Assembly: GCA_026770705.1 (NCBI GenBank)
Contig: JANJGN010000041.1
Location: 1,426,001 to 1,490,000, forward strand
Length of the DNA: 64,000 bases
Source: Isurus oxyrinchus
Lineage: Eukaryota
Direction: 5' to 3'
Of this stretch, positions 30,403 to 51,235 are shown in pieces. The notes under the pieces are model-generated. The model saw only the letters and a list, made by a program, of their open reading frames with translations. It was not told where the DNA came from and did not search any database. Both the position numbers and the translations under genes were made by a program. Within the stretch, counting starts at the first letter, position 1. The number at the start of each line of letters is the position of its first letter.

Positions 30403-32119
30403 TTCCATTTGTGTCCACTGCTTATGCTGCCTGGGTTCCAGGTGCTTGTGCAGCACATCAATGCCGATGGAGTATTGAGTGCAAGGTTTATATCCGGAGG
30501 TTAGTACATCTCTCATTACTCAAACGTATGAAGCATTAAAAGAGACAGGAGGAGGCAATTCAGCCCATGGAAGCTGCACTGCTTTTCAATTGGAATGTAG
30601 CTGATATGTGGCGGAACTCCATCACTGCTCATTGGCTCTATGTACTTAAACAGTTTCCAAAGTGAAAGCTACCAAATGGAGTTTTTAAAATGATTCATTT
30701 GTTTTCTAAATTAACCTGGAAACACGATGCAGTTAATCCTGGTCTCCTCGTACTACCCATCTCCCTGTAGTCACTTACTGATATACTGCATCATTCATGT
30801 ACAATGTTTCCAAATCCCGAGACCTGCTCATCACCTCCTTATCTCTGAAATCACCTCCTGCACAATACTTAATTCAGGTATTAATAGTTCTCGAATTCAT
30901 ACATCATTTGCTTTCCTTGGCAGCAATGCATTCTGCTGCTGGAGCCTCGAGCTCCTGTATTCCCTCTGTTAGCCTCTCCACCTCGCTCTTCCCATTTTAG
31001 ATAATCCATAAAATAAAATGTTCTCATGTGAACTTCAGGTCGACTATTCTTAATACGTTTAGGGGTGGCTTTTGGTAATTTATCCCAATCTCAGACTTCT
31101 GTATGGTTCCTTGGGGCATTTCTTCACTCACCTGGAGCGCCAAAGGTTTCAACCTGCTAATTGGGCAGTGCAGACGCCTCCGTTCATCTCAGTTTGACAC
31201 GATTGGAGCTCTCTGAATATGGCTGGTCCCATATCCCTCACTTCTAACACAGTCTGGGGACCGTGTGCAGTGCTGATGTCTGTATCCCTCTGCAAGAGCA
31301 CCCTTGGAGAACAGTGCACAGTTCTGGTCTCCATATCCTCGGTTAGATAACATTTGTAGCGCTGTGCACAGTTCTGGTTTCCATATCACTCGGTTAGACC
31401 ACACTTGGAGCGCTGAGGATAGTTCTGGTCTCAATATTCCTCGGTTAGATAACATTTGGAGCGCTTTGCACAGTAATGGTCTCCATATCCCTCGGCTAGA
31501 CCGCACTTGGAGCGTTGTGCACCGATCCGGTCTCCATATCCATTGGTTAGTCGAAGCATGGAGCACTGCGCACAGTTCTGGTCTCATATGTGTTGGTTAG
31601 GCCACACTTGGAGTATTGTGAACAGTCCTGGTCACCATACCACTCGATTAGACCACGCCTGGAGCACAGTACACAGTTCGAGTGTCCATATCCCTCAGTT
31701 AGACTACATAAGGAGCACTGTGCACGCTTGTGGCCTCCATTAGCCTCGGTTCTTTTGGACCGCATGCAGAGCACTGGAAGCAGCGCTGGTCTCAATATCT
31801 CATGTTTAGACAGTACATGGAGCACTGAACACAGCACTGATATTCCTATCGAGATGTTAGATCACACTAGGTACACTGTGCGCAGCTCTTGGCTCCAAGT
31901 GCCGCTATGATATCATCAATGTCCATAGATGAGCTCTCAGTACGCATCAGCAATCAAAAGTGCGCCACACAATTCCATGGATCAATAAATCCCTTTGCAG
32001 GTATGATCTTGTGATTTTGGGACAGTGGAAGGACCTGTAATATGGGAGGATTCAATGAAGAGGAGACTTTGATGCCTTGGGAATGCCGATTCGTTTTAAA
32101 GTGCTGTGGGGCTGCATGA
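30403..32119 (+). pseudogene. Beta-defensin-like pseudogene, copy 1 (exon-1 remnant ~30403-30466; exon 2 32001-32119)
   Basis: Exon 2 after tttgcAG: (G)MIL*FWDSGRTCNMGGFNEEETLMPWECRFVLKCCGAA*, with the same Cys register as copy 4, C1 and C3 changed to F, and a stop at 32012. The exon-1 remnant LLMLPGFQVLVQHINA lacks ATG and GT (this assignment is weaker). PolyA signal decayed to AAGAAA (32249). Confidence 0.8.
31190..31897 (+). repeat. 51-bp CR1-derived minisatellite, ~14 units (intron of copy 1)
   Basis: Unit ~ctcggttagaccacacttggagcactgtgcacagttctggtctccatatcc; 17-aa periodicity in the ORF track; one frame reads LVRPHLEYCEQSWSP. Confidence 0.9.
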
Positions 32120-32479
32120 GGTAGAGAAAGTTGAATAAGTCGCATTGTGAAGCTAACTTGAGGATTTGGCTGAGACTGACTCTAATAATGTAATTCAGGC
32201 TATGATACTTGTTTAGATCCAAAGATTCGTGGCTTTCTGAATCATGTGAAGAAACTGTCTGTTTCGATCACTGCCTCTTTTCCCCGTGTCTCATTTCTCA
32301 CTCGGATTGGCGTGTCACCATATCGACAGGGAGGGAGGAGAGGTAAGGAAATTGTAGGGGCGAACTGGCATCTTCAAATGCCAATGTCAACATGCGTGTA
32401 GAAAATGCCAGTGTGTCATTAGCATCTTATAGCTCCTGAAAAGTCATGCTATCAGAATCAGAACTTCACTAAATGCCAA

Positions 32480-33230
32480 AGGTTCGCCAACCATATTCTT
32501 TGGTTTGTCATGGCCCAATGAAAGGAGCAAGGTACCATGCTTCTTGGCACAGGGGCATATAAGAAGTCCGAGCTTGCACTTGCAATGCTTGCTCAGCATT
32601 GACTCCAGGCACTGTCTTGTCACAAGGCTTGAGGGCAAACAGGGCAATGGGAAACTCCTGCTGACTCCAAGCTGCCTCTCTCCCGCAACTGATTCAATCT
32701 CTAATACTCCATTTTAAACACCACATCGAAAAGCAATGAGCATAACAAAGGAACATAATGTTTTCTGCTGTGGGACCAGCATGTTCATCACCCAGAGTGG
32801 CTCAGGGTCACCGTTACAGACCCATGTGGCAAAGCCATGTAAGGTAGAATAGGACTGAAGCAGGTGAACCAACAAGAAGGAAAATTCTTCGTGGCCTCAG
32901 CATCACCAATCCACCTGCTGCAGAAGCATCTCTCGCTGACGGTGTTGCTATGAATGACCACCGCAAAGCCCTACTGACAACAGCCCTCTGTTTTTCAAAC
33001 TGAGGACGCACTCCTTTGTGTTTTGTGACAAGCATTCCTTTCAACGGGGTAGTTTCAAAAGAGATCACACAGCACAACTCGCAACATCCATGAGGTGCCA
33101 TGGGCCGTCAGCAGTAGCAGAATTAAATTCAGGCACAATCTGCAAGACTATGGCCCGATATGCTCCTCACCCTTCCACGACCATTACCGTTAAACAAAGA
33201 GAAAAGGCATGGTTCTCGGGCAATGCAATG
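32480..33230 (+). mobile_element. CR1/L2-group LINE endonuclease-region fragment, shared downstream of all four defensin copies
   Basis: atgttcatcacccagagtggctcagggtcaccgttacagacc (32781) recurs on the minus strand at ~36750 and ~43740 and, more diverged, on the plus strand at ~50571. Confidence 0.7.
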
Positions 33231-34209
33231 AGAATTTCTGATTTTACTACAACAATCTAGCCTTAAATTATGCCCGTTCCTTGCAATTCTATACCGCAGT
33301 CTACCCTTCTAGCCAACTGGTATTCAGTTCTGGCATCTGTTGTATGACAATTCTACACTCTCCAGAGCCCAAGAGCAAAATGTTTCCCAATTACAAACTC
33401 AGTCTAAGTGTGCATGAGCTGATGTAATGATGAGCAGCAAGCAAACCTGAGGATCCAACCCTGTGGTCCGTCACCCCTTTGACGCATTGATCTACTTGCT
33501 CAGGCTGAAGTTACTAATGGTGCTTCATTTCAGCTGAGAAATATAAGATCTCAATTCCTACACACTTTTGGGATTTTCTTATGTTGACCTAGAGTTGGCA
33601 GCTCTACAAATGGTAATGTGCTTTAACGTAACTTTAATGAGACAAGGCAGCACAGAATGGAAATGAGGTTGTATTGGGAAAACATTTGTTCCTGGGATCC
33701 GGAGATTCTAGCATTATCAGTCACCAGACGCCAACCTGGATGCCGATTGTATGGAATGGTGGACTGAAGGCTTGAATCGTAAGGGATGGGCAGAAGTTAA
33801 TTCTAGATTGTTGTTGGAGCGTCAGAGTCTGTCGCCAAACTGGTCGAGAATTGTAAACTACGTACTATGTATGGGTGTATATTGTAGGGATGCACTCATA
33901 CCATTGCTTGAGAATCGCAAAAAAGTTGCTAAGCGAAGGCAACACATTCTTGCCTTTCTAGTGAAGATTACATATAGCCTGACAGAATTTTAAAAATCAA
34001 AAATATAAAAGAGCTAGAATAAGCAACATAACGGAAGTGGAGAAAATTTCGGGACGTTAGGATGGCAAATCCCCAGGGTCAGATAGTTTCCATGCCAGCA
34101 ATTGAAGGTAAAAGCTGAGAAATTGCGGATGTTCGGTCTTTACTATCTCGCAGTTCCATTCATCTCAGAATTATTCATTCAGGCTGGCTAACTCTTTAAG
34201 GCACTCTCT

Positions 34210-34413
34210 NNNNNNNNNNNNNNNNNNNNNNNNNNNNNNNNNNNNNNNNNNNNNNNNNNNNNNNNNNNNNNNNNNNNNNNNNNNNNNNNNNNNNNNNNNN
34301 NNNNNNNNNNNNNNNNNNNNNNNNNNNNNNNNNNNNNNNNNNNNNNNNNNNNNNNNNNNNNNNNNNNNNNNNNNNNNNNNNNNNNNNNNNNNNNNNNNNN
34401 NNNNNNNNNNNNN
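34210..34413. other. Assembly gap (204 N) flanked by CR1 fragments
   Basis: Run of N; CR1-like aaatccccagggtcagat on the left and CR1 3'-type sequence on the right. Confidence 0.95.
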
Positions 34414-34949
34414 GCAGTCAAGTTACCCTAATGTGACTTGTCAGGCGTGGAGGGAATGCAGGATATGCTTACCAGAAATGACACCCGGGCTAGAAGGGAA
34501 AATAGAATGGGAGAAATTGCACAAATCCTGCTTGTGCTTCCTGGAATTCGGAATGTTCCTGATTAGTTGGGTTGAAGTATTCAATGTGTTAAGGGGAACA
34601 GATGAGGCTGGAAAACAGAAAATATTTTCAATGGTGGAGGAGACTCACGCGAAGGGACTGCGTCTAAAATGTCAAGTCAGACTGTTCTCTGCAACATTTA
34701 GGGAACATTGCTACGTACATAGGCAGGACACAACGCTAACCCCCTTCTTAAGGAAGAAACAGATGAGAGATCTATTGCTAAAAATTAACTGTAAAATTGA
34801 AAGATTTCTGTGGCCCAGGGCTCAGGTCCACACCATGGTCACAACATGGATTCAGATGACACATTTTTCACAACTTTGTGGAATTCCAGCCTGCGCATTT
34901 TTCACACAGGCGGCTGGGAAGCAGCTGGAGCCCTGTTCTGGGGCGAATC

Positions 34950-35900
34950 CTTCCTGCCAAATCCTGGCGCCCATGTTCAAGTCTGTCAGACAGGACGGAT
35001 ACTCGTGACCGGTCAGTTCTGTGATCGAAGCAAGTTTTTACCAGGCTGATAAGCAGCCCGAGACGAGCACGACGTTTTGCAAGGATGGCCAGAATGGTGT
35101 CCAAAATTGGTGCAGGTACAAGCCAACAAACATTCTGCCCTCTTCCATCTCCTTCGACAATCCATACTTGGATTGTGTGTCCCACTTGCGAGGCCACCAT
35201 TTATTGACCATTCCTAACAGCCCATGAGAATTTCCTGGCGGTCTACTCCCCTGTGCCGCTACAACCCATGTGTTGCCTGTGCACCCGCAGACAGTCGGAG
35301 AGTGCGGTTTGCGCCGTGACATGAGGTTACAGATTGGGCTTGCGCTCAATCCTGCCTCTGCGGCAGCTGGCCCTCATAGCATCATGGATGCCCAATGCTG
35401 CGCTGCCCGACACGTTTGGGAGTGACACACAGCACCATGGAAGGTGCCCTGAGAGTGAAGACTGGACTTTTCCCCTAAAAGACTTGGTTCCGGTCAGTCC
35501 AGCTGATACCTGTCATGGACAAATTAATCTGCTCAAAGTTAGATTAGCGAGGACCGGGCCAAGCATCTTTCGCTCCTCGTGTTGGTTCTCTCACCACCTG
35601 CTACTGCAAAATGGAAGTCGAGAAAAATAGACGGTTTTGGCTGCTGCCTGCTCACGGAGGCTTGGAAAGGCAGATGCTCTCACAGAAACACATGCAAAAG
35701 CTAGAAACAGGAGGCTAGATGTTGAAGCTGTTGCTCTTCTTCACGTTTTGAAGATTGTTGCCATGCTGAAACAGCCTAGAAAGGGATACGTAGCCAGGCC
35801 CAAGCCAAGGAACGCCCCCAAGAATCGAATGGAGTGGAACAGGTGAAAGTCCCAAGCAGGCTTTTGAGTTCATTGAAGGACAGGGACCTTCCTTTCCTTC
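34950..35900 (-). mobile_element. Possible Tx1/L1-like LINE 3' fragment
   Basis: Minus-strand RLGLLISLVKTC resembles the Tx1 LLGLAKLAI region; otherwise heavily degenerate. Confidence 0.35.
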
Positions 35901-37064
35901 CAGCCTAACTGATAGATCCTTCAATACACAGCCAAGACAGTAAGCAATGATGCTGCTGAGTCATTGTTACTCCTTGGCACTGACCACCCCACAAACCCAG
36001 AGTTCACCCAGTGCCATCTTTTCAATCCCAGCTGATGTTACACCTGGATAAGCGTGATCCCAGTCTGAAACTGAAATTGATAGACACTAACTTTTACTTG
36101 TTTGTTTAGATACGTGGAAAGGACTATTGAAGAGTCGCTGGAGACAGCTGATGTGCTTTTAACAAAATAACAAATCTTTTATTAGGGAAGAAACGTTGAA
36201 CTATATTACAATATTTATTTACCCAGGGCAATACCTTTACAGATATATAAAGGTTTGTCAGGATAGCACATGTTACAAAAGCTATCTTAAACTCTAGTCC
36301 TCACTGTAAGCACAAAGTCCAATAGGCACCCTGCAGTCAGATAGACAACACTCTAAAAACACGTTACAGCTGTTACTTCAACCAGATGCAATGACTCTTT
36401 CTCCAACTCCCCCAACACCCTTATCGCCCAGTGAGCCAACTGGGCTCATTGATCCCCCTCCGTTTTCAGCTATTCGACATGCTCTGTATCTATCCAGTTT
36501 ATCACAGAGGGAGTACCAAACAACATAATGTCGTGTGTCCTGATGATTTACCTTCACAGGGGCTGGGCAGTGGTCACCCCTCCCCATGCCGCCTTGAGCA
36601 GAGGCAACTGCTGCGGGTAGATTTTTGAGGCCCGGTGAAGTGAAATTTCCCCCTATTGTTGTTTCTCTCACCTTCTGTCGCAGGCCACGTCTGACAGGTA
36701 TGTCCTTCAGGGGTCGACAACTATGGTCAGGCGTGAAATTACCGAACCACTCTTGGTGACGCGCATTAAATATCCACCGTTCCCCCTTCATAAAGAACAC
36801 ATCCTGTGTCCCCTTGTCTTCCGATGCTTCCCAATTGTTGATTGACATAGAGGAGAACAGATTGATCAGGCGAGCGAGGGAGGGTAGGAATCAGAATGCG
36901 GTGTCTTTGATCCTTTTCATTCCTCATGACACGAGGGGCTGGGTTGGCGATCAGAAATCAACAGGAAACTTCCTTTCCTGAGTTTTTTTTAATGCTGTTT
37001 CGACACGTCATAGATGCTGTTGGGAAGGTTGTGGGCTCAATTATTACTTTTTTAAACTAAAAAA

Positions 37065-37381
37065 GGGAGGCCAGCATTTATTGTCCAAGCCTAATTGCCC
37101 TTGTTCAGAGGCCATTTTATAGAGTCAGATACATTGCTGTGCACTTGGGTTCAATTGCAGACGAGACCGGCAGACCTCCTTTCCTAAAGAGCATTAGTGA
37201 ACCAACTGGGCTTTTATGATAATTGGTACTAGTTCCATTGGTTATTGTTAGAATTGTTACCTCCAGAAATTAATTGAACTGAAATTCCAACCTATGCCAT
37301 GGCGGGATTCGAAACTGGGTCCTCAGAGTTTTACTCTGGGTCTCTGACTTACCAACTCAGTGTCAATACAACTATGCCACT
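37065..37381 (-). mobile_element. tRNA-derived SINE
   Basis: Minus-strand head tggcatagttgtattgacactgag...gtttcgaatcccgcc (A/B boxes), body ttcactaatgctctttaggaaagg, and LINE-type tail aataaatgctggcc; a second copy lies at ~51236-51545(+). Confidence 0.75.
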
Positions 37382-37779
37382 TCCCCTTCCGAAGGTCTGC
37401 CAGCGGGCCTCAGATTTTGAGGGTCTGTCTGGCAGAACGTACACAGGGGTGGCAACGGGTGAACCTAGGGCATTAACCATAAGGAAAAAGACTGTGTTGG
37501 TGACTGTTTGGATCTAAAAAAAGACAGTATGGCCCGGCCATGATATCACCTCCCCTCACTCCCCGTCGGTAGGTTGATACACTGATCTGAGTGAGAAATG
37601 AGACGCGGATAAGAAGCGGTGATCAACACAGCCAGTTTTATGCACATGATCCAGAAAGCATTTGATCATTGGCCTTTGGACCTACAGAATGATGCAGAGC
37701 CTGAACGACAGAAATTCCAATTTGCTTCAGTCGGAGTCTCAGGCGGGTCTTGCAGTGGGACATCCTGCCTCCGGGTTAC

Positions 37780-39316
37780 TCAAAGAGGTTGGCAGCTCCT
37801 GAACTTGAAGCGGAGGTTGCAATTTCCTGTTGGCCCTGTACGCATCACAATGCTCACATGGGAGTCTTCTACAAAACATTCAACCCCCGTCACACAGCAC
37901 GATCGGGAATGGAAAACAGAAAGGAAGAGCTCATTAGTACCGCTGGTCAGAACTGCTGGGCACCCGCATGCACCTGAAACGGTTTTGGCTTAAAGTGCGT
38001 ACATGGAGTCCCGATATGTGAACAGTGGTCCATATGTGGTCTAACCGAGGCATATGGAGACCAGAGCAGTGCACAGTGCTCCAACTGTCGTCTAACCGAG
38101 GGATATGGAGACTGAACTGCGCACAGTGCTCCGATTGTGGTCTAACCGAGAGGTGTTGAGACCAAAACTCTGCACAGTGCTCAAAGTGTGGTCTATCTGT
38201 TGAGTATGGAAACCAGAACTATGTACACTGTCCGACTGTCGTCTAATTGAGGGATCTGGCGATCAAATATATGCTCAGTGCTTCGAGTGTGTTCCAATCG
38301 AGGGGTATGAAGTCCAGAAAAATGCAGAGTGCTCCATGTGTGGTCCAAACGAGGGATACAGAGGGCAGAACAGTGCACAGCGCTCTAGGTATGATCTAAC
38401 CGAGGGATATTGAGATCAGAACTTTGCAGAGTGTTCCGAATGCGATCTCAATGAGGTATATGGAGACCAGAAATTTTCACAGTGCTTAACGTTCTCTCTA
38501 AATGAAAGCATTAAAGATGGGAATTGTGCACAATGCTCTATCTGTGGTCCAACCGCGGGATATGGAGTCCTGAACAGTGCACAATCAGAATGATGTAGCT
38601 TATGCAACAACTTCATGAAATTTCAAATGGTGCCTCAAGACAGCATGTTAGAAAAATGATTTGACAGAGAGTGACATTAACAGGGATTAGTGGAAGGTGA
38701 CCCAATGCTTACTCGAAGATGGTGGATTGAAGGGCTATCACCAGGGAGGAGAGAGTGTTGGATAGTTTTACAGTGGGAACCTCCGGCCTTGGTCCCAATC
38801 AGTTGAAGGCATCGTGACCAATGGCAGGCTAGTTAATATTTCAGAAAGGATTGGAGGCAGAATGTGTGTGGCATAGGTATCTGGACGGCTGTTTGGGTTA
38901 AAGGAGATTACAGAGAGAGAGCGGGACGAGACAATGGAGACATTGGGAAATGTCATGTATGATTAATTCAAGATATCACCAAGGGAAAGCTCCTGGGTGG
39001 TTGATAGTTGAGCTTGGGTCATTAATGTGCGCAGTTTTTGAAAAAAAAGGCTCACACTGAAACTCACAGCTTTCTGTTTGGACAGGATTTTAATGGTCAT
39101 GGAACGAAGATTGTCCAATGGTGTTAAGACAGTTGTCAGCCGTGATCCAATTGAATGCGTGTATAGGTTTTTGGGGCTGAATGGGCTTCTCCTGTTCCAG
39201 AGAATTTTTCTAGACTTTGACAACTCAGAGATAACCTGCGTGGATAACCTACCGATAAGCTGGGACTCCAATAGCTCCAGCAGTCAAAGTACCGAGACCA
39301 GTGCTTTCCACCTCAT
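37780..39316 (-). pseudogene. Beta-defensin-like pseudogene, copy 2 (exon 1 39253-39316; exon 2 ~37780-37916)
   Basis: TATAAA at 39366-39371. Exon 1 MRWKALVSVL*LLELLESQLI + G|GTAGGT (phase 1), with premature TGA at 39284-39286. Exon 2 FHSRSCCVTGVECFVEDSHVSIVMRTGPTGNCNLRFKFRSCQPL*, with C3->S, the terminal CC lost and the acceptor mutated. Confidence 0.8.
38003..38585 (-). repeat. 51-bp CR1-derived minisatellite, ~11 units (intron of copy 2)
   Basis: Reverse complement of the 31.2 kb unit (ggtctaaccgaggggatatggagac...gcacagtgctcc). Confidence 0.9.
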
Positions 39317-39365
39317 CCCCTGAGCTCGCCAGAGTCACAGTGAGATGATTGGTATACGGAGGCTC

Positions 39366-39371
39366 TTTATA
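39366..39371 (-). promoter_or_regulatory. TATA box of defensin copy 2
   Basis: CATATAAAGA ~50 bp upstream of the ATG; the homologous position in copy 4 reads GCTAAAAAGA (~48747). Confidence 0.6.
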
Positions 39372-41939
39372 TGAACAGATACAGAATTCTGTCGTTAATA
39401 ATTGCAGACACACGGTGAAGGTTAGCTCAACTATGTGCATGTCAAAGGAACACATCACTAACTGAGATGGACAGTAACTGGAATCCACGTCTAAATGTGT
39501 CTCCCAAATCGGATTTTATTAATCAGCAGAGACACTGATAAATGTAATGATTGACCAGGTGAAGTATTACAGGAATTCTTCACTGTGAAAAATTTAGAAT
39601 CATTCAGCAGTGATGGAGGCCATTTGGCCCAACGAGTCTCTGCTGGTTCATTGAGAGGTTTACCGAATCATACCATCCCCATAGCTTCTCATCCCCCATC
39701 GCCCTGTCATTACCTTCCCTGTCAATTATTCATATAATTTCTCTTTTGAAAGGTGTGACTGAATCTGCATTTGTTACCTTTTCAGGCAGCACGTTCCAAA
39801 TCACAACATCTCGCTGCATCATAAATACATTCTGTTCATCTTTCCTCCACTTACTTTGTGAATTATCATTAATATATTTCTACTGCTTTCTCAATCCCCC
39901 ACCCTCGATTGTACCCCACTGTTATTACTGGAAGAAGAGTTGGGGAATTACACCTGATGCCATGGGACCAATAATTATCCAGCGATTAGTATCAATGATA
40001 CAGACTCTCTAGCCATTACGTCACTGGTGTTTGAAGAGCTTGCTGTGGCCATATTGAGTTCTTTGTGTCCCGCCTGACAGAAGAGATGGCAGTTCAAAAC
40101 TAATCCACTGCCGTGTTCTTAACTCTGGTGAAATCTGCGGTTAAGCTGCTTCTCCAGAATTCCTGGTCTTTCTTTGAACTAATTCATCGAGGCGTCATGG
40201 AATTCGAACTCAATGTGGGAGGCATCCAGAGAGAATACCTGCCGACCTCTGAGAGCCTGTCCCGCCAGGGGGTACAGGCTTTTTCGGGGGATGTTGATGG
40301 CCCTGGTCTTTGGGACAATGGATGTGAGTTCCGATTCCCGCATTGGAGCGGGAAAATGCGAATGTGCCCTTGGTATTTCCTGACCTCCCTCCCCACCATA
40401 GTCAATAGGTTGACACAGCGGCACTGAAGTAGGCGCTGATGTTGGTACTTGATTCAATAGCAGTGGGGCAGGTTTCATTGGTCTGCACATGTGTCAGTGG
40501 ACCAAACACACTGGACCTTCCTCATCCCACTGCAAATCCCCTCTCCACCTCTGAGCCGTGAACAGGCCACGCAACACATGGCTCTCCTACAATGCCTGCT
40601 CCGTTGGCTGCACTTCCCGAAAGAACAAGCATTCCTATAATCTACCAACGTTTGAATAGCTCTTGCTGCCATGGTGCCATGGTTACTTTCCCCCTGCACT
40701 CTACAGCCACCACTTCCAACCTTACTGGCCGCCAGAGCCTGTTGCACATTCAGGAAGCCTGATGCTCCTCCATTTCTTCTTCCTCTGTTCCCCATGCCTG
40801 CCACACTCGCAGGCAGCCCTCCTGTCCCTAGCCACTGATCAAATCAGAAGACCCTGCCTGAATAATGTGACTGCCCCCTAGTACAAAGTGCCCAGGCAAC
40901 TGTCCCACTCCCAGGGGCATCACTGTGTCCGCGGCTGGGCCTCCATGTGACACTCACTGCCACCCTGCCTCTTGCCTTGCAAGTTGTTTCTCCATTTCTC
41001 TCTCTCACGCATTCTCTCTCCACCAAACCCATGTCTCTGTTTCTCCACCACTTTCCTTAGTGCATCCTTTTCTGAACCCCTTGCTCAGTTCCTCACTCTC
41101 TCATCTCCATATCTCGATGACTATCTCTTGATCATATTTTCATTGATTCACGGGACGTGGGCTTTGCTGGCTGGGTCCAGAATTTACTGCTCATCAGTAA
41201 TTTCTCCCTTGAGAAAGTGATGGGGGAGCCACCTTCTTGAACTGCTGCAGTCCATGTGGTGTCCAAACACCCACCGTGCTGTAAGGAATGGAGTTAAATC
41301 TTCATGCTCTGTTCCACTGTTTGGCTATTTTTGTCACCATTGATCTTCCTTCTCCAGCTCCATCTTCCACTCATGCCAACTCTGTCTTTATCTCGCCTTC
41401 TCCCTTTCTCTCTCTCACTCCACCTTCCACATCTGCACTGATGGTTAAATATTTCAATTTTATTCCCCTGCTTGTTGGTTAATAATTTACCCCTAAAGCG
41501 GAACTGCCCTTTCTCCAGTCGCCATCCTGTCTGACTCCAGATAGGAATGAGCTGTCCCTGGATATGATCCAGAAGATCAATGCCTTCCTTTTGGGGACAA
41601 TATGCAATCCCTCAATGAATGATTGTCTACATATCATCAGATTAACTGATCTAATGCTGTGAAATAATGCAAGGAGATGTTTTATCAGTAGTGTATATGT
41701 CTATATATATTTATAGTGTGCCAAATGGAGACTACAGCCCCATCATTTCACCCAATGCCATGAGGTTCCATTAGATGCTCGTTGAATTTCGAGTCCTCGC
41801 AGGCCCACCCTCTTCTGACAGTATCCTAATGGGCTACCAAATCTGGTGAGCTGGCTCTGCCGCTGGTGATGATTATTCGCAGGGACAGTGATGGGAAATT
41901 CTGAGCCATTGGCTTTATGGTATCATTCGGTGAGTTTAG

Positions 41940-42500
41940 CTATGTCAGGCCATTGATCGGCCAGTCTCTGGGGCTACGCCACAAATGTTGTCGTTCCCTT
42001 GAACAGTCAAGTGCTGATGAGGCACAATTTTCACGTGGCAGCATTTGTGCCCTCGGCGAACCCACATCCACTGAATGGGGGCAGTGGACACGCTGCCACA
42101 AATCGCCACCAATTTTAATGGCAGCCCTGCTCGGGGGCCCAAACTCTCGGACTGGGCACTGGAGGTTCTGAAGGATGCATTGCAGAGGTGGAGCGATGCA
42201 CTGCAGAGGTGCATCTGACTGACCCAAGCTCACCTTCCTGCCCCTCTCCTCCTCCAACAGCTGACATTGTCCTCCCTGGTCTAACACTCTCCTCCCTTTC
42301 CCCGTCCGGACCAGGTGGATCTCTAGCACAATGACATTCAACAAGAACTCTCATCATCCCGGTGAATCCAGGAGGTTGTCCAACATATACGAGCAGCCTG
42401 GCACTGATCTTGTTCAGTTGATGCCTGCTGGGGTACTGGATTGTGACCCTGTTCATGAAGTGGTGTGCACTGCAGAACATCCGGCTGCGCTGCACTGGTG
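41940..42500 (+). mobile_element. Possible PIF/Harbinger transposase remnant
   Basis: Weak motifs AID (41949), PGGSL (~42311) and VCTAEH (~42463) in the expected order; very degenerate. Confidence 0.3.
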
Positions 42501-44564
42501 GATGGTCAGCTCCTGAATTATTCTTCATGAGTTACCATCTGCAACAGCCTACAACTCATGGATGCACCCACAAACTGACTGGTGCACACCAGTCTATGTC
42601 CTGTGTCCATATTCCTGCCTTAGCCCCGTTCCCCTCAAAACATTTGACGTTCAAACATCTCCCCATCTCATATTTAAAGGTACCATCTTCCTTTCACTAA
42701 CTGCCATTTGTGGAAGAGAGATTCAACTCTCTGCTACCCTTTGTGTGTCGATGTATCCTTTTCCGAGAATAACAAAGCAGCGTGAATATCTTCTACATAT
42801 CCAACTTCGCTCGAATCTAATCGAATATTTAAGATTCTTGACCAAGGACAACAATGAATCTGGTTTCATACAACAATCTAACCTTAGCTTGTACCCTATA
42901 TTTTTATTCTGCTCCAAGTGCAGAGTGCTCAGACTGTTCTGCGATGAATTCCCCTCAAATTACAAATCGATTCTTCAGGCTATTCATCTAGCCAGTCAGC
43001 ATGCACTTTCTGGCTCCTGATTAATTCTGATGCTGGAGCCATTGGAGCCCAAATGTGGCCAAATGCAATCTCCGTTCAAACCTTATCTTTTTACTCTACT
43101 CAAACCTGCATGAAAGCAAATGACTGTTAAAGAGAAGCCAAGTCAAAGGCATCTTAACAATATTCCAATAATACCTACATATCAATGAATTTCATCAATA
43201 ACACTATGTACAGTAGAATTGCTATTGTAGGTAACAATAATTGCACCAATGTATCAATGAGCTGATTCCTAACAATGTTAGAACATCGGTTTCTTTTCGA
43301 TATGCCTTACCCTGCACTTGACACTCTCTCCTGCATTCTTCAGTGAATCAGGCTTGGTCGCTTGCTTTGAACGTTATGGTGGTGTCAGGAATATGGCAGG
43401 CAATATCCTTGCCGGTTGTATTTGAAGTTAATTTCGCTGCTGCTGATGGCCCTTGACGCCTTGTGGATGTTGAGATTTTAGCTGTGTGGTCTGGTCTGAA
43501 TCTATCCCATTGAATCCAATGGTTGCCAGAAAATACAATGGAGAGTATCCTCAGTGTGAAGACAGGAGTCCGTCATCACAAGGGCTGTGTGGTGGTCATT
43601 CCTATCAACACTGTCAGGGACAGATGCAACTGTAGCAAGTAGATTGCTGATGAAGATGTCGTGTAGAAACATCGCTCTTGTTGGTTCTATTCTGCCATTC
43701 AGGGCTCGGACACCTAGGTCTGTAACGGTGACTCTGAGCCACTCTTGGTGATGGACATGCAGGTGCCACAGCAAAGAACATTATGTGCATTTGATATGCT
43801 CAGTGTTTTTTCCATGTTGTGTTTAACATGGAGGAGTATCTATTGAACAGATTCGGTAAAATGGTATGCGGGAGTCAGCAGGATCTTCCGTTTCTATTGT
43901 TTGCCCACCTGTGTTGAGACATCAGAGAGACTGGAGTCTGTGTTGAGCACTCCTGTCATAAGCCTACAGTTATGCATTTCTCTGTGTCAACACATCGGGA
44001 AGAACTTTTCATTCACTGGGTCATTACTTACCCAGGGATGTGGACGATGAGCCTGTGACATTGCCTTTTCAGTTATGATTATTCCAGAGTGATTATGTAG
44101 GAGCAGCCGGGTGTCAAAGTGGCCCTGCCATTACCTGACCTGCCTTCACTCCATGCTGATATGGTGATGCACCGATCCGAGTGCCAATTTGGACATGGAC
44201 AAGAGGCAGTGATCGATGCAACCAGTTTTATTCACATGATGCAGAAAGCAGTGGGCTGGGGTCACTGCATTCTCAGAATGTATCAGAGCAGGATTTATGG
44301 AATTACAGTTAGCTCCAGTAGGAGCCTTGGACATCTCGCACATAGGGACATGTTATGTTTAGGCAATTACTTTTTTATGCAGCAAGTGAGCCAAAATATG
44401 AAGTATGCCAAGAACCACCTCTCATATATTTAACATTGGACAAATCTGCAGGTGCCTCCAAAATCATCACACTCTCTCCGTTGTCCATGGAAACAGAAAT
44501 GAATAATTCAGTGCTACAAACTTTTAAAGCTCTGCCGTATCAGGCTGCCATGTAACGAATTTCT

Positions 44565-44840
44565 CTGGAGACCAGAATTGTGCACAGTTCTCCAGCTGTG
44601 GTCTAACCGACGGATATGGAGACCATAACTGTGCGTGCTACTCCAATGTGTTCTAACCGAGTAACATGGAGGCTGGAACTGTGCATAGTTCTCTAAGCGT
44701 GGTTGATTCGAGGTATATAGAGGCCAGAGCTCTGCACAGTGCTCCAAGCATGGTATAACCGATTGATATGGCGGATGGAACTGTGTACAGTTCTCCAGGT
44801 GTGCTGAAAGCGATTGTTATGGAGATGGGACTGTGCACAA
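44565..44840 (-). repeat. 51-bp CR1-derived minisatellite, ~5 units (intron of copy 3)
   Basis: ggagaccagaattgtgcacagttctccagctgtggtctaaccga repeated. Confidence 0.9.
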
Positions 44841-44984
44841 GGGAAATGCTGCACTTTCTGCATAAAGGAGGAGGGGCAATGGTGGGTTTGAAACACGGTC
44901 CAGACTGATAGGTACCCTCCCGCCCAGCAGGGCATTACTGTCCTAGCAGAGTGAATGGTGATGAAGATGTCTCCCCACATCCGC

Positions 44985-45066
44985 CGGCGGGGGGGGGGGG
45001 GGGGGGTGGTGCAGAGGGGGGGGGGTGCAGGGGGGGGGGGGGGTTGGCGGTGAGGGGTGCGGGGGG
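44985..45066 (+). repeat. Poly-G tracts (G-quadruplex-capable)
   Basis: Several long G runs separated by tgca/tg spacers. Confidence 0.85.
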
Positions 45067-45449
45067 ACACACTGCGGCAGAGCCATAAAACCCTGACCAA
45101 AGTCTGTAGGTAATGCAGGATCTCATCGAGGGTCACCTCGCAGATGGGATGAACAAGGCAACTACGATAGTTGCTTGGGTTATTATCGACAATGATGATT
45201 CATTTTCTTTTAAAAACGATTATGGAAGGGTGCAAAACGGATATGGACAGCTTTCTGTTTAGGAAAGGTTTTAAGGTTTGTGGAATCAAGATGGGCAGAT
45301 GAAGTTAAGACAAAATTTGAAACCTATTTCACTGTATCAAGTGACTTTACAAAAATGAATTGCAATCAGGATATGTGATTGTGGGGGTCGTACAGAAATT
45401 GCATATACATTGTACATTTAAATCTCAGGAATTATATGTCCTGGTGACA

Positions 45450-48400
45450 GGTGTTGACAATGCCTTGACATGAAGCGATTAATGTCCATCATGTTGTAGG
45501 AAATTATTTAAATGCTGGGATTGTTGTAGTGCCTCTGTCTATGTTTGTGTCTGTGTATCTTAACTGGATGAAAGCCAGAGAGGCTGGTTGATTGATGTGC
45601 AGTAGTTTTGGATTTTAGTTAGATAAAGAGAAGCAGTAAAAGGTAAAATGGAATGCATATTTGTTGAACAAACCATTCAAAAGATTGGTAAAATGTTGCT
45701 CCTAGCTACGTGACACCAAGCAATGTCTTTGCATTGCTAATAAAATGGTTGGAACGAAAGGATTATTGTTAACAGAGGTAAAATTAAAGAAAAACAAACT
45801 AGTAAAGCAAATGAAAATTTGCATTCAAAGGGAAAGCTAGATTTAAGCATAAATTAGTTTGTACATACGAGTCATTGACAGCTAAGATCAAACCATGTTG
45901 TCAGCTTGGAGCTGTCTCTGCGAAGAAACAAATTGAAATGAACCACAATTTGAATTCCTAAGTTCAAATGTGCTTTGCCTGGTGTCAATACAAAGTCTAC
46001 TAGTTATTGGTGCCTTGGTGAAAATTTACCTGGGAGCAATTAATTTCAGAAATTGTTTAAAATGTATTAAGTTAATAATTTGTTTACATGTGTATACGTT
46101 ACAATTTGTTGTTAATTTAATAAATGTTTACTTTAGTTTTACATAAAAACCTCGTGAAGATTGATCGTTTTATTTCCGAATTCAGAGTTGCATCTCAAGC
46201 ATACCAGTATAGGCTATGATAGTTCTTCAATTTTCCCTTTTGATTTGTGACAAATAAGCTTTTATCAACTGCTGGGTTGTTAGAGCCTATTGTAGTAGAA
46301 GAACCTGTTGAGACAGAATCAGCAGAGCTTGGGCAGAAAGAGAATCCTAGTGTTTCCAAACTGTGTGGTGATTAAACCATAGGTGAACTCATTTACACAG
46401 GAAGTGGAATAATCTAACAGACAGGCAGACAATGCTGAAATTCAATCGGTTGGATCAATCCTTGAAAATATTGCTCAGGATGAGAGGGTTGAAGAGGATA
46501 AGACTGAAGTATTCAGTTCATTAGTGGAACTAAATATGCAATGCCCATTCGTAACACAGGTAAACCGCACCGTTTAATCTGAAGCAGAAGCAGAATGCAT
46601 TACAGAGTATATTTACATTCAGAACAATGTTAATCAAGAAATTGAGGCAGCGTCTTGTTCATGTAGATAGAAAGTGGACAGTAGTGCACGAAATAGTGAT
46701 ACCATCTGTGTACTGAAATTAAATTTTGAGAGCACCTCATAAAATTCCAATCGCTGTAAATGTGGGAATTAGGAATACCCAAGCTAATGACAATGTTGGA
46801 AACAATCTCTTGGACTTGATTACATGAAGATGTACACAAATTCTGTCAAACATGTCCCATTTGTCAGTTGTGACTTAAAGCAATAGCAGCTGTTAAACCT
46901 GCACATTTAGTGCAAATGCCAGCGTTTGAGGAACCATTTAACAGTTTCCTGATTGATTGTGTAGGACACCTCCCTCAGACTAAAAGTGGTAATCAGTACT
47001 TACTGACAGTCATATATGTGTCCAGAAATTTACAGAAGCTTGCCTTTAAGGAAAAATGCAGCAAAGTGGAGTAAGTCATTTTATATTTGAATGTATGGAT
47101 CAACAAAAGAAATACAGTCGAATCAGTGTTCGAAATTCATATCACAGCTGTGTAGATAAGTTATGGACAGCGTAGGAATATAACAATTTATGAAGTCAGC
47201 GGATCTCCCTGAATCACAGTGTGCCTTAGAATGGTGGTAACACTGCGTAAATGCTATAATTAGCGTATGTGTTCAAGACTATCCACATGGTTATTTTAGA
47301 AGGGATTTTATTCTTTTTGTTTCCTTCAGGGGCATACTTAATGTGTCAAAAGGATTCAGTCCTTTTGAGTTAATTTATGGTCATGCAATGAGGGGAAAGT
47401 TCAAACTGATTCAGGCCAAATTCATGGGGCAAATCTCAGATACTTCTTTTTTGGACCATGTGGCGAATTTCAGAGAAAGATTGAGGAAGGCATCTGAGCT
47501 ATGCAGGGAAATGTTAGTTACACCTCAGCAAGTGCCGAAGGAAAATACAGCTTAAAGGACAAAGTTTCGTAGTTTTTTAGCTGTGGACAAATTGTTAGTT
47601 TTGTTTCCAGTGTTAGGTGAGCATTTGAAGCCAATGTTTAGCAGGCTTTACCAGGTGGAAAAGGGGCTAAGTGTGGTAATCTATGTGGTAAAGTACCCCA
47701 GGTCGTAGGAAGAGCCAGCCGGTGCATCATTGAAATTTGCATAAACATATTTTTAATAGACAGGATAAACAGGAAGAGGTACTTGTAGTTGTAAGTAAGG
47801 GAACAGAGGTAAAGGGTAAGGATTCTGAACCTGACCTACATCTGATTTAAATGCATAATGAGGAAGTACTGAGGAGCATAAATTTGTTCTTAGGTTACCT
47901 TCCAGAAAAGCGCCAGGGTGATTGAAAACTGCTATTGCAGTCATACAAAAGAATTGGGAAATACATATTCGGCTGTACATGATACTGAGTAGGGGAATTA
48001 AGCTTCAAAAAGGCAACACGTTTAGAGATGAAATCCAGTAAAATTACCAATAGAACAGGAGGAAATTCAATTTCTGCTTCAACATGACAGGATAAGGCCT
48101 GGTCACAATAATTGGAGCTCAGCCAACGTAATAGTGCGGAAAACATTTGGGTTACAAACACACTATTGATTACCGAAAAATGAACGCCATAACAAAGGCT
48201 CATTCATATCACAGGCGACGATCAGACGAGCTAGCAAGGAATCCAGACAGTGTACACTTACCACAAAAATTGACTTGCTGAGAGGATACCCTTATGTGAA
48301 AGGGCATCAGCGTTTCTGATGCTGGATGGTCTACATCAACGCCATTATTGAAAGCTCTTTGGCATGAAAAATAAATGCACCAGCAGTGCTTCCTGGAAGG

Positions 48401-48450
48401 ATAATGGAAGATTATGCAATTGTTGAAATGACTCAATTTGAAATTTTTAA
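45450..48450 (+). mobile_element. Gmr1-like Ty3/Gypsy LTR retrotransposon remnant (integrase upstream of RT)
   Basis: Integrase motifs CQTCPICQ, AFEEPFNSFLIDCVGHLPQTKSGNQYLLTVI (~46920) and GFSPFELIYGHAMRG (~47352), followed by RT motifs NWSSANVIVRK, IDYRKMNAITKAHSY and TKIDLLRGY (48110-48290). AT-rich LTR-like region ~45450-46283. Confidence 0.85.
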
Positions 48451-48802
48451 AATGACAGAGCTATGGAGAATGAGTTGATATGGAGTCGGCAGATCGATAG
48501 CTCTGTCAATACGCCAAGAGAGGCTAAATGGCCAAAATGGCCTTATTTTGTGCAAAATGATTCTTACTTCTAACACAGTGACGTTGTTTATTAAACCTTC
48601 TCCACTTCAATCATTACACCGCCCTGTCTCCCTCTTAATTACCACACATCCGACTTGGAATAGTTATTGCGTCGTCATCACTGTTAAAGTGCAGCCAATC
48701 CCCATTGTGTGCATGTTATTATTAACTAGTGAACAGTCGCTCAATTGCTAAAAAGAACATTGGTGTCTGGTTATCTCCTTGTGACTCTCAGGAGCTCAGG
48801 AT

Positions 48803-48866
48803 ATGATGTTGAAAGCTCTGTTTGCAGTACTTGGATTCCTGTTGCTGGGAGAGACTCTCTCTATCT
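48803..48866 (+). CDS. Beta-defensin-like copy 4, exon 1 (signal peptide MMLKALFAVLGFLLLGETLSI); 3' boundary uncertain
   Basis: The 5'UTR gtgactctcaggagctcagg and 21 codons align with copy-2 exon 1; K followed by a hydrophobic core. No GT at the homologous donor; the frame runs on to TAG at 48911. Confidence 0.6.
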
Positions 48867-49665
48867 CGCTCCAAGAGATTGTGCAATTGGGAGTTGAGTG
48901 TGTCTCTCAATAGTGATTCTTGAGCAACATTGATTGGAACAGGAGTCCATTCAACCACTCGAGCCTGTACTATCACTGAACTGGTACAGGGCAGATAGTT
49001 GCTTTACTCCAACTGCCTAGAACAGTCAAAATGATTTCCAAATGCAAATTTACTATTTTTAGTCTGGTGCATTTTCACACAATTCGCTAAATTGTTTTTT
49101 TTTTATTTAGATAATCAGCAGCGAGGCTTATCATAGAAACGGTTCTTCTTTTCCCCTCGTATTTCTCATCTGCGTTCGACCCCTTGGTGATGTATTCCCT
49201 GAACACAATACCGTGTGGACAAATCCTTCCCTATTTCCCCTTTTCCAATTGTTGTCTCCATCTCCTTCCCCGTCTTGTCCAGCAGTTTCACAACCGTGAG
49301 GGGATACCTGCGCCCCAAAGATACTGTCAGAATGTGCACCAACATTGGAGGCTGTGTCTTCAGATGCCCTTGAATTCCCTCCCTCTGTTCATGAGGCTTG
49401 GTATAAGTTGTTTTTCATCATGTTCCTGTTAAGTACACTAATTGGTTTTATATTAAATTGAAGATGCGACAGAAGTTGTTTTCATTCTGGCTGTGCAAAG
49501 CCCAAACCACCATTTTCATCTGTGAGGCGCTGTCTTGAATACAATGCACAGATAAAGTGGCTCTGATAGACCACACTTGGGGAACAGTGCACATTTTTCC
49601 TGATTTGAGCACAATCGACTTTCCTGGCTCGTGGCATCAATAACCTCCTCCTGTCTCTTCACCAG

Positions 49666-49814
49666 GTACATTACTGGGATGTCCCAGCGTTGGAGGGAAA
49701 TGTAGATTCAGCCACTGTAAGCGAGCTGAGACCCGAGTCACAAATAAATGTCTTCCTTTCTTCAAGTGCTGCATGAAACATTCAGTCACAAAAAGTATAC
49801 ATGTACCATTCTGA
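49666..49814 (+). CDS. Beta-defensin-like copy 4, exon 2 (mature peptide GTLLGCPSVGGKCRFSHCKRAETRVTNKCLPFFKCCMKHSVTKSIHVPF)
   Basis: Good acceptor cctcctgtctcttcaccAG, phase 1; C-x6-C-x4-C-x10-C-x5-CC with GxC and the conserved Glu between C3 and C4; 9 K/R versus 1 E; AATAAA at 49922-49927. Confidence 0.85.
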
Positions 49815-51235
49815 ATCCCGTCTGAGGCTCCAGCTGAAGCTGACAGTCTTTTCTGTAAGTCACGCTCTGCCACCTGCCCTAGAAGCAGCCCCACGTGGCC
49901 CACTGTTTTCTGCTTCATGTGAATAAAACCTGCTGCATTGATCAACTCCTCTTGTCCGTTGCTCATTTCACATTTACATCACCACGTACTGAACAGGGGA
50001 TGAAGGGGGAGGTTGGCAAATGGGCAGGACCACTTTGACATGGGATAATGCCACAACAGATCCGGCCTCAGAAACACACAATTTCCAACCAATGCCCCAG
50101 GCTCTTCCGGCACAATCCAGGATCTGCCCTGCACCACGAGTAGGGCAGAGGCATCCGGGGTAACGGCGGAGTGGCAGACAGTCCAGTGGGGGCAATAATG
50201 CGCAGCACCCAGCATTTACTGCAGTGTCTATGGTGCCTCACAGAGCATCAGGGAGAAGACATAAAACGAGGAGAAAAGGAAAATAATGTGGATGCTGCTA
50301 ATCTGACAAAAAAACATAAACATTTGGAAACGCCAAGCAGATCTAAAAGCAGCTGAGGGGAAGAAATAAATCCACAGATAATTGGAATCCGTGTAAATCT
50401 TCCTCAGAGCCTTGGTTCAAAGGAAGTTTCATTCAGACACAGGAAAGAAAGACTCTTGCGGCTTCCCAAATTTCATCTCTCCTCAGTTGGTGGATAGTTT
50501 GTCCTGTGTGCTGAACACCAAGTTAAAGGAGTACTGGGAGAGCAGATTGCACGCTGATGGCGAGTCCCCGATGTTCCTTACCAGGAATGACTCAGCAGTG
50601 GTACGGCTCACGATTTGTTTGGGCCATGAAGAAAATGGACGGCAAGGATTCAAGAACAGGGTTCCTGATTACCTTCTCGAGGGCAACTTACATTGAGCAG
50701 CAAAAATGTGGCCTAGCCACTACACCTCCATCAGGAGGAATAATAATAGGGCATATCTGTCAGGGTTGCTCTGTGCCAGTTGGTGAAAGAACCGGCAGCA
50801 TGCAAAAAACAACATGTCAATATTTTCCTCACCAACTGTCGGTTTTGCAAATGCCAATGTCATCTTAGTTGGAGCGATCACTGCACAAAGCTTTGGAGCA
50901 GAAGTGTTGCAATCACACTGAGGAATTATTCCATTGTGTTGAGCGTCACTCCCACAGTGTTAGATGTATCACATTCAGAACGGAACTAGCAGCGCTATAC
51001 TGTGCGTATGTGAGGCACTGTGGGCCATCAGCAGCAGCGGAATTATGTCACAACCACAATCACCAATCATGGCCCAGCATATACCCCAATCCACCATAAC
51101 CACCAAATTAAGAGTGCAAACATGGCACAATGCAGAATGCAGAGACCATGTCAGGAGCAGCATCAGGTATGCCAAAACATCGATGGGTTGAGCTGTAGCA
51201 CATGCAACAGCTGCAAGTATATTTGCGGGAGGGTA

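What the first reader, a model, noticed from the sequence alone, without database searches (positions are those of the whole stretch)
30403..49927. Hidden four-gene beta-defensin-like cluster in a probable cartilaginous fish
Seen: four short exons share one Cys register (C-x6-C-x4-C-x9/10-C-x5/6-CC; looser in copy 2) at 32001-32119(+), 37780-37916(-), 44367-44485(-) and 49666-49814(+). Each has a homologous signal-peptide exon upstream (clear for copies 2 and 4, remnant for 1 and 3) and a conserved 3'UTR block containing the polyA signal. All are below the ORF-track cutoff. Established: this spacing, the GxC motif and a signal exon joined in phase 1 to a mature-peptide exon are hallmarks of vertebrate beta-defensins. 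Inference: this is a lineage-specific, birth-and-death antimicrobial peptide locus that automated annotation would probably miss; to my knowledge chondrichthyan beta-defensins are poorly catalogued, but I cannot verify novelty here.
Basis: partly seen in the sequence, partly recalled or inferred. Interest (0 to 1): 0.92.

Follow-up and report, generated by a model that had tools for sequence, protein, structure and literature searches.

The report
Shark beta-defensin-like cluster, mostly pseudogenes
A shark genome window holds four related copies of a small two-exon gene that looks like a beta-defensin antimicrobial peptide, but three copies are clearly dead and the fourth, with a perfect peptide exon, lacks a normal splice site.

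Summary
The four repeated units are real. They are paralogues: a signal-type exon or its remnant, an intron with a 51-bp minisatellite, a Cys-rich exon and a conserved 3' block.

Only copy 4 (49666-49814 +) keeps an open six-Cys exon, C-x6-C-x4-C-x10-C-x5-CC, net charge +8. That pattern occurs once in the window against 0.005 per shuffle.
- Copy 1: in-frame stop, two Cys changed to Phe.
- Copy 3: stop, one Cys changed to Phe, acceptor lost.
- Copy 2: stop in the signal exon, acceptor lost, altered Cys pattern.
- Copy 4: no canonical exon-1 donor.

Beta-defensin likeness rests on weak but concordant hits:
- avian beta-defensin 3, E=0.014, all six Cys aligned;
- Pfam Defensin_beta_2, E=0.17, below its cut-off;
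- ESM Atlas nearest clusters are all beta-defensins;
- a phase-1 intron.

The fold test failed (pLDDT about 50). No RNA evidence was found.

The host is an elasmobranch. The scan's first readers noted similar clusters at eight other places on this genome piece. None of my six paper searches returned a paper describing shark beta-defensins.

Verdict: a beta-defensin-like birth-and-death locus, not four live genes.

The parts
30424..30499 (+). Copy 1, remnant of exon 1. It has a substitute ATG and no hydrophobic core. A donor-like gag|GTTAGT follows at 30500 (76 nt, phase 1). The original ATG region is absent in the alignment.
31283..31751 (+). Copy 1, intronic 51-bp minisatellite (9.2 units)
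32001..32119 (+). Copy 1, Cys exon, a pseudogene. The acceptor tttgcag|GT is kept. There is an in-frame TGA at 32012-32014. C1 and C3 read Phe, so 4 of 6 Cys remain.
32232..32359 (+). Copy 1, conserved 3' block. The polyA hexamer is changed to AAGAAA (32249).
34210..34413 (.). Assembly gap (N) in the spacer between copies 1 and 2. No unit crosses it.
37533..37659 (-). Copy 2, conserved 3' block. The hexamer reads CATAAA (37642).
37780..37908 (-). Copy 2, Cys exon. The frame is open but degenerate: C3 reads Ser, one Cys of the final pair is lost, and the loops are longer. The acceptor reads AT instead of AG.
38003..38486 (-). Copy 2, intronic 51-bp minisatellite (9.5 units)
39253..39316 (-). 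Copy 2, exon 1. The ATG is at 39316 and the exon has 64 coding nt. The donor tcg|GTAGGT gives phase 1. There is an in-frame TGA at codon 11 (39286-39284). A TATAAA lies at 39371-39366.
44123..44249 (-). Copy 3, conserved 3' block with AATAAA (44232)
44367..44486 (-). Copy 3, Cys exon, a pseudogene. The acceptor reads AT. There is a TAA at 44432-44430 right after C3. C4 reads Phe, so 5 of 6 Cys remain.
44566..44840 (-). Copy 3, intronic minisatellite of the same 51-bp unit, seen by BLAST against the arrays of copies 1 and 2
45247..45312 (-). Copy 3, intron-1 piece homologous to copy 2 (77.6% over 67 nt). No exon 1 is recognisable upstream of it.
48803..48899 (+). Copy 4, exon-1 candidate. The ATG is at 48803, followed by a signal-like hydrophobic start and an open frame of 36 codons. 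The place homologous to copy 2's donor reads tcg|CTCCAA. The only phase-1 GT is the weak agt|GTGTCT at 48900. The TATA place is changed (48747-48758).
49666..49814 (+). Copy 4, intact Cys exon. The acceptor caccag|GT is in phase 1. It has 48 codons, six Cys as C-x6-C-x4-C-x10-C-x5-CC, net charge +8 and a 13-residue tail. The stop is at 49812-49814.
49896..49975 (+). Copy 4, conserved 3' block with AATAAA at 49922-49927

Best explanation
The window carries a piece of a large, regionally clustered family of two-exon genes for secreted, cationic, six-cysteine peptides of the beta-defensin type, in an elasmobranch (shark) genome.

Gene plan, shown as a composite over the copies:
- a TATA box;
- exon 1 with an ATG and a hydrophobic signal peptide (64 coding nt in copy 2);
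- a phase-1 intron of about 0.8-1.5 kb that holds transposon debris and a 51-bp minisatellite;
- exon 2 with the whole Cys domain and the stop;
- a short 3'UTR with AATAAA.

Inferred working: the prepeptide is secreted, the signal is removed, and three disulfides form, presumably C1-C5, C2-C4 and C3-C6. The cationic peptide then acts on microbial membranes or as an immune signal, as beta-defensins do.

In this window the locus is largely a graveyard of birth-and-death evolution. Copies 1, 2 and 3 are pseudogenes. Copy 4 has a perfect exon 2, acceptor and polyA signal, but a changed TATA place and no canonical exon-1 donor. It is either recently disabled or spliced through a weak or other donor. 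I put the chance that copy 4 is live at about 0.25.
For: Paralogy of the whole unit.

Six-Cys register in copy 4: found once in the window against 0.005 expected per shuffle.

Cys retention in the dead copies: Cys codons are kept at 4 of 6 (c1) and 5 of 6 (c3) positions in a gapless, same-length alignment. Third codon positions are the least conserved (0.31-0.44 identity against 0.40-0.53 at first and second positions). That is the mark of a long coding past.

Similarity to beta-defensins:
- The best PDB sequence hit is avian beta-defensin 3 (7lzl_A), E=0.014, with all six Cys and GG.CRF aligned. The next two hits are alpha-defensins.
- Pfam's only hit is Defensin_beta_2 over its full length, positions 2-30 of 30.
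- The ESM Atlas top hits are all beta-defensin clusters, scoring 0.81, 0.78 and 0.76, with 10 of 10 family-bearing hits in one clan.

Gene architecture:
- Copy 2's donor gives phase 1 after 64 nt, and the acceptors of copies 1 and 4 are in phase 1.
- A phase-I intron at the 5' end of the Cys-rich region is the conserved mark of beta-defensins and big defensins (PMC7203481, passages read).
- Net charge is +8.

Related species and genome context:
- A related species (organism B) holds several variants of the whole copy-4 unit at about 81-94% identity. One exon-2 contig has no gaps, with 26 differences in 295 nt.
- First-reader notes place similar clusters at eight other spots from 243 kb before to 5.25 Mb beyond this window on the same genome piece (unchecked notes).
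Against: - The Pfam score of 12.7 bits is below the 22.2-bit cut-off (E=0.17), and PF00711 was not listed at all.
- The word-indexed search found no candidate.
- phmmer over 1.84 billion representatives gave 0 hits at E<=0.001. A 48-residue query can hardly reach that threshold.
- A profile of all four copies' pieces hit no defensin in the PDB, only zinc-finger and RopB noise at E>=0.24.
- The AlphaFold models were poor (pLDDT 52.8 and 49.6), and Foldseek found nothing. Fold and disulfide pairing are therefore untested.
- No RNA support: no listed holder is an RNA run. The two RNA-guess runs laid gave one 37-nt piece and nothing.
- No single copy in this window has every signal intact.
Confidence: 0.7

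Rival explanations
1. A lineage-specific family of secreted Cys-rich peptides that only converges on the beta-defensin Cys spacing. It would not be homologous and could have another fold or role, for example reproductive, toxin-like or signalling.
For: All sequence matches to defensins are below formal thresholds. No fold was obtained. Copy 4 has a 13-residue tail after the CC pair and a C3-C4 loop of 10 with a C4-C5 loop of 5, rather than 9 and 6.
Against: The three independent weak searches all point to beta-defensins and to nothing else. The phase-1 intron sits exactly where beta-defensin and big-defensin genes have it.
Confidence: 0.17
2. Copy 4 is a live gene and the locus is functional. 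It would splice through the weak phase-1 donor at 48900 or from another first exon, giving a longer pro-region.
For: - Exon 2 is perfect, with a strong acceptor and AATAAA.
- The exon-1 frame stays open for 36 codons, past the lost donor place, and a phase-1 GT exists at 48900.
- An organism-B contig over exon 2 keeps the frame, with 0 gaps in 295 nt.
Against: - The donor agt|GTGTCT fits the consensus poorly, and the TATA place is changed.
- No RNA contig was seen.
- Use of that donor would add a seventh Cys at the junction codon, as read. The exons were not joined.
Confidence: 0.25
3. The units are non-coding repeat or transposon-borne modules, and the Cys pattern is chance.
For: The units are full of repeat debris: a 51-bp minisatellite and shared transposon-like stretches in intron 1. 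In organism B many contigs at mixed identity pile up on the stretch.
Against: - The six-Cys pattern is expected 0.005 times per window.
- Cys codons are kept at homologous positions in the dead copies, and third positions decay most.
- ATG, a signal-like start, a phase-1 donor and acceptor, and a polyA signal all sit in the right order.
- There are only four copies in 64 kb. The other noted clusters all lie on the same genome piece.
Confidence: 0.05

Closest known systems
Vertebrate beta-defensins (Pfam PF00711 Defensin_beta, PF13841 Defensin_beta_2), for example avian beta-defensin 3 (PDB 7lzl)
   Same: - Six Cys in the same order, with near-identical spacing.
- A Gly-x-Cys before C2.
- A cationic mature peptide.
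- A signal peptide on its own exon and a phase-1 intron just before the Cys domain.
- Tandem clusters with pseudogenes.

For the literature, passages of PMC7203481 and PMC8231796 were read.
   Different: - The Pfam score is below the cut-off.
- The loops are 10 and 5 rather than 9 and 6.
- There is a 13-residue C-terminal tail.
- The host lineage is cartilaginous fish. PMC7203481 describes beta-defensins as spread 'from teleosts to mammals'. The review PMC6795676 lists no shark defensin in its passage on antimicrobial peptides.
Teleost beta-defensin genes
   Same: A short first exon ending in phase 1 (55-58 bp in sea bass, 64 coding nt here), six Cys and a cationic peptide (PMC8231796, passages read).
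   Different: Teleost genes have three exons, with the end of the Cys domain on a small third exon of 22-25 bp. Here the whole Cys domain and the stop lie in one exon, as the same paper describes for the two-exon mammalian genes.
Big defensins of invertebrates and amphioxus (C-terminal domain)
   Same: The same disulfide class, and a shared phase-I intron before the Cys-rich domain (PMC7203481).
   Different: No hydrophobic N-terminal domain is encoded here. Exon 1 holds only a signal-type sequence.

Membership tests
Vertebrate beta-defensin | Six Cys in the register C-x4-8-C-x3-5-C-x9-13-C-x4-7-CC (the bounds are recalled, not from a call) | tested here: met
   Copy 4 reads C-x6-C-x4-C-x10-C-x5-CC. 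Copies 1 to 3 keep only 4, about 4 and 5 of the six Cys.
Vertebrate beta-defensin | Score at or above Pfam's gathering cut-off for PF00711 or PF13841 | tested here: not met
   For copy 4, PF13841 scored 12.7 bits against a cut-off of 22.2 (E=0.17), and PF00711 was not listed. Copies 1 to 3 had no hit.
Vertebrate beta-defensin | Significant sequence similarity to a beta-defensin of known structure | tested here: inconclusive
   7lzl_A, avian beta-defensin 3, at E=0.014 and 19.1 bits with all six Cys aligned. A profile of all four copies lost this hit.
Vertebrate beta-defensin | Three-stranded beta-sheet fold with C1-C5, C2-C4 and C3-C6 disulfides | tested here: inconclusive
   AlphaFold2 gave pLDDT 52.8 from the single sequence and 49.6 from a 5-row alignment. 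Foldseek against the PDB gave 0 matches on the poor model.
Vertebrate beta-defensin | Signal peptide on a separate exon, with a phase-1 intron directly 5' of the Cys-rich region | tested here: met
   This holds as a composite. Copy 2 has a donor after 64 coding nt (phase 1). Copies 1 and 4 have acceptors ag|GT in phase 1. The criterion comes from PMC7203481. No single copy keeps both sites and open frames.
Vertebrate beta-defensin | Cationic mature peptide | tested here: met
   The copy 4 exon-2 peptide has 6 K, 3 R, 1 E and 0 D, giving +8.
Vertebrate beta-defensin | Expressed and secreted, with antimicrobial or immune activity | not testable with these tools
   No RNA run holds the stretch. 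The RNA-guess runs X21 and X24 gave one 37-nt piece and nothing.

The most novel reading that the evidence does not exclude
Sharks carry a large, so far unannotated family of beta-defensin genes. The scan has noted clusters over at least 5.5 Mb of one chromosome piece, and variants exist in a second species.

If true, beta-defensins would date to the common ancestor of jawed vertebrates. The two-exon plan, with the whole Cys domain in one exon behind a phase-1 intron, would be the ancestral one, and the teleost three-exon plan would be derived.

The peptide exons are far more diverged than nearby non-coding blocks. Exon identity is 39-50% with saturated silent sites, against 67-80% in the 3' block and 73% over 567 nt of downstream flank. 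This would point to accelerated, diversifying evolution of the mature peptide, or to homogenised flanks.
Probability: 0.5. Interest if true: 0.7.

Novelty: new member of a known kind. Interest (0 to 1): 0.45.

Why it matters
Beta-defensins are the most widespread vertebrate host-defence peptides. PMC7203481 gives their range as teleosts to mammals, and the shark entries in the PMC6795676 passage on antimicrobial peptides are transferrin, squalamine and kenojeinin only.

A verified chondrichthyan family would do three things:
- move the origin of the family to the base of jawed vertebrates;
- say which gene plan is ancestral;
- show that standard annotation misses tens of short two-exon genes in repeat-rich shark DNA.

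For this window alone the yield is modest: one candidate peptide worth synthesising, and three pseudogenes that document turnover.

Tried and rejected
Searches and tests that led nowhere:
- The word-indexed protein search with the copy-4 peptide found no candidate.
- phmmer over 1.84 billion representatives gave 0 hits at E<=0.001. A 48-residue query cannot reach that bar, so this says little.
- Two structure predictions were poor and Foldseek gave nothing. I did not run the VIA-align searches because a model at pLDDT about 50 gives meaningless matches.
- A profile of the four copies' pieces against the PDB returned only unrelated hits. The decayed copies dilute the signal.
- Pfam on 8 of the 23 ORFs of at least 110 aa found only one GPCR, so no synteny marker for defensin loci was obtained.
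- Rfam found only one tRNA-like match outside the units.

Considered and rejected:
- I first read the word depths of 75-180 in organism B as high copy number. I rejected that because the runs' contigs sum to 3-4 billion letters, so the base coverage is unknown.
- Taken at face value, dN/dS would be about 0.35-0.40. I do not use it because dS is saturated or undefined.

Papers:
- Six searches returned no paper in their listings that describes a shark, ray or chimaera beta-defensin.
- For PMC6795676, PMC10707392, PMC7203481, PMC8231796, PMC4690011, PMC7350212, PMC13337447 and PMC4364288 I read only passages found by term search.
- PMC4451809 is not held.
Gene lists in the supplements of shark genome papers could already name such genes.

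Full report
**What is there**

The window is vertebrate DNA with GC 0.43 and two N gaps, at 24520-24771 and 34210-34413.

A single-exon rhodopsin-type receptor ORF at 14662-15618 (Pfam 7tm_1, E=5.5e-19) has 2,112 relatives at E<=1e-10. All 120 listed carry names of sharks, rays or skates. The closest are 79% identical (Carcharodon carcharias) and 76% identical (Cetorhinus maximus). So 'cartilaginous fish' is confirmed, and a shark is likely.

**The four units**

An nhmmer profile of that alignment finds just these four units in 64 kb, with E from 1e-101 to 1e-122, plus a 48-nt scrap at 40420-40372.

Upstream of the exon, copies 1, 2 and 3 hold arrays of one 51-bp unit (31283-31751, 38003-38486 and about 44566-44840). 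Copy 4 holds a single unit.

Downstream, copies 1 and 3 stay alike for another 567 nt at 72.8%. The units are true paralogues in the orientations +, -, -, +.

**State of each copy**

Copy 4:
- Exon 2 (49666-49814) follows a strong acceptor (caccag|GT) in phase 1.
- It encodes 48 residues with no stop and six Cys as C-x6-C-x4-C-x10-C-x5-CC. Net charge is +8, with a 13-residue tail. AATAAA lies at 49922.
- Its exon-1 candidate starts at ATG 48803 with a signal-like hydrophobic stretch and stays open for 36 codons.
- The place homologous to copy 2's donor reads tcg|CTCCAA. The only phase-1 GT is a weak agt|GTGTCT at 48900. The TATAAA of copy 2 is replaced.

Copy 1:
- It keeps the acceptor but has TGA as the fourth full codon, and Phe at C1 and C3.
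- Its exon 1 lacks the original ATG region, and its hexamer reads AAGAAA.

Copy 3:
- It has AT for the acceptor AG, TAA right after C3, and Phe at C4.
- No exon 1 is recognisable.

Copy 2:
- It has the best promoter and donor: TATAAA 55 nt before ATG 39316, and tcg|GTAGGT after 64 coding nt, giving phase 1.
- But it has TGA at codon 11, AT for the acceptor AG, and an altered Cys pattern.

No copy is intact in every part. Three are pseudogenes.

The exons were searched apart.

**Is it more than chance?**

- The strict six-Cys pattern occurs once in the six frames of the window, against 0.005 per shuffle (200 block shuffles).
- In a gapless, same-length codon alignment of copies 1, 3 and 4, Cys codons stand at 15 of 18 homologous positions.
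- Third codon positions are the least alike (0.31-0.44) and first and second positions more alike (0.40-0.53). This is expected of sequences that evolved for a long time as coding DNA.

**Is it a beta-defensin?**

For:
- phmmer against all PDB chains puts avian beta-defensin 3 (7lzl_A) first, at E=0.014, with all six Cys and the GG.CRF stretch aligned. Two alpha-defensins follow at E 1.4 and 2.5. Only these three matches were returned at E up to 10.
- Pfam lists a single family, Defensin_beta_2, matched end to end.
- The ESM Atlas nearest clusters are all beta-defensin clusters, at 0.81, 0.78 and 0.76. Residues 1-38 alone give the same result. These are leads only.
- The intron sits in phase 1 just before the Cys domain. 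Passages of PMC7203481 describe this as the conserved mark shared by beta-defensins and big defensins.

Against or missing:
- The Pfam score is 12.7 bits against a cut-off of 22.2.
- The two large protein searches were blank.
- The four-copy profile hit only noise.
- Both AlphaFold models were poor, and Foldseek found nothing.

I therefore call it beta-defensin-like, with membership probable but not shown.

**Other species and other places**

DNA runs of the window's own species hold about half of the sampled words. Many runs of a second coded species (organism B) hold about a tenth.

I laid four runs on 48400-50100 at 80% likeness. The two organism-B runs gave 100 and 141 contigs covering all 30 bins. 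There were several variants:
- One contig over promoter and exon 1 has 19 differences in 303 nt.
- One over exon 2 has 26 differences in 295 nt and no gap.
- Another has 44 differences and three 1-nt indels with a net shift of one, so it is frameshifted.
- One jumps from 49706 to 50023.

So a relative has the family too, again with live-looking and broken members. Most differences were not listed, so I cannot say whether its copy keeps the Cys or a donor. Depth is no copy number here.

The two RNA-guess runs of the window's species gave one 37-nt piece and nothing. There is no evidence of expression either way.

The scan's first readers noted like clusters at eight other places on the same genome piece, from 243 kb before to 5.25 Mb beyond this window. 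These are unchecked notes, but their clustering on one piece fits a gene family better than a dispersed transposon.

**An unexplained contrast**

The Cys exon is among the most diverged parts of the unit:

| Segment | Identity |
|---|---|
| Cys exon | mean 0.46; 0.39-0.50 gapless |
| Last 80 nt of the intron | 0.47 |
| First part of the 3'UTR | 0.56 |
| 80-nt polyA block | 0.73 |
| 567-nt flank, copies 1 and 3 | 0.73 |

dS in the exon is saturated. Either the peptide exon and its borders evolved much faster than the flanks, or the flanks were homogenised or are constrained. From recall, faster exon evolution is described for mature-peptide exons of mammalian defensins and some toxin genes. With four copies I cannot tell the two apart.

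**The gap**

The N stretch 34210-34413 lies in the spacer between the convergent copies 1 and 2. Neither flank resembles any unit. No frame or exon depends on it. Only the order and orientation of copy 1 relative to the rest do, and that could not be tested.

**Known or new?**

Passages read:
- PMC7203481 says beta-defensins 'spread from teleosts to mammals'.
- The review PMC6795676 names only transferrin, squalamine and kenojeinin as antimicrobials from cartilaginous fish.
- PMC8231796 says teleost genes have three exons and mammalian genes two.

Six full-text searches listed no paper describing a chondrichthyan beta-defensin. The library lacks most subscription journals, and supplements were closed. 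So this is absence in what I could search, not proof of novelty.

**Verdict**

This is a real, decayed piece of a beta-defensin-like multigene family in a shark. It is of moderate interest for this window, and of higher interest for the family as a whole if homology and expression are shown.

Noticed in passing
window 14662-15618 (+): An intact single-exon GPCR ORF of 318 aa (Pfam 7tm_1, E=5.5e-19). It has 2,112 relatives at E<=1e-10. The 120 listed are nearly all named 'probable G-protein coupled receptor 139' in sharks, rays and skates, often several per contig. This points to a very large elasmobranch expansion of this receptor type.
   Followed up: partly
window 31283-31751, 38003-38486, about 44566-44840, and a single unit about 49561-49596: A 51-bp minisatellite sits in the intron of each unit. 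Read in frame, its unit resembles the conserved C-terminal ORF2 motif of CR1-type LINEs (recalled, not tested). If so, the array grew from a retrotransposon fragment before the units duplicated.
   Followed up: partly
window 30076-30147 (+): An Rfam tRNA match just above the cut-off (30.6 against 29 bits) that ARAGORN does not call. The surrounding 330 nt recur at 27987-28316 at 64% identity. It is probably a tRNA-derived SINE just upstream of copy 1.
   Followed up: partly
window 37909-37912 and 44487-44490 (-): Copies 2 and 3 both read CCAT where copies 1 and 4 have the acceptor CAG. This suggests they were duplicated from an already disabled copy. Yet their exons are only 46% identical while their flanks are about 72-78% identical. 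The contrast is unexplained.
   Followed up: no
window 44989-45066: A G-rich low-complexity run (poly-G with GGTGCAGA-like units) lies between the minisatellite and the lost exon 1 of copy 3.
   Followed up: no
window 33237-33327 and 33736-33826: A 91-nt inverted repeat (70% complementary, 408 nt apart) lies in the spacer downstream of copy 1, a few hundred bases before the assembly gap.
   Followed up: no
window 34433-35008 (+): A 191-aa ORF starts 20 nt after the assembly gap and has no Pfam family. It may be a transposon ORF cut by the gap.
   Followed up: partly
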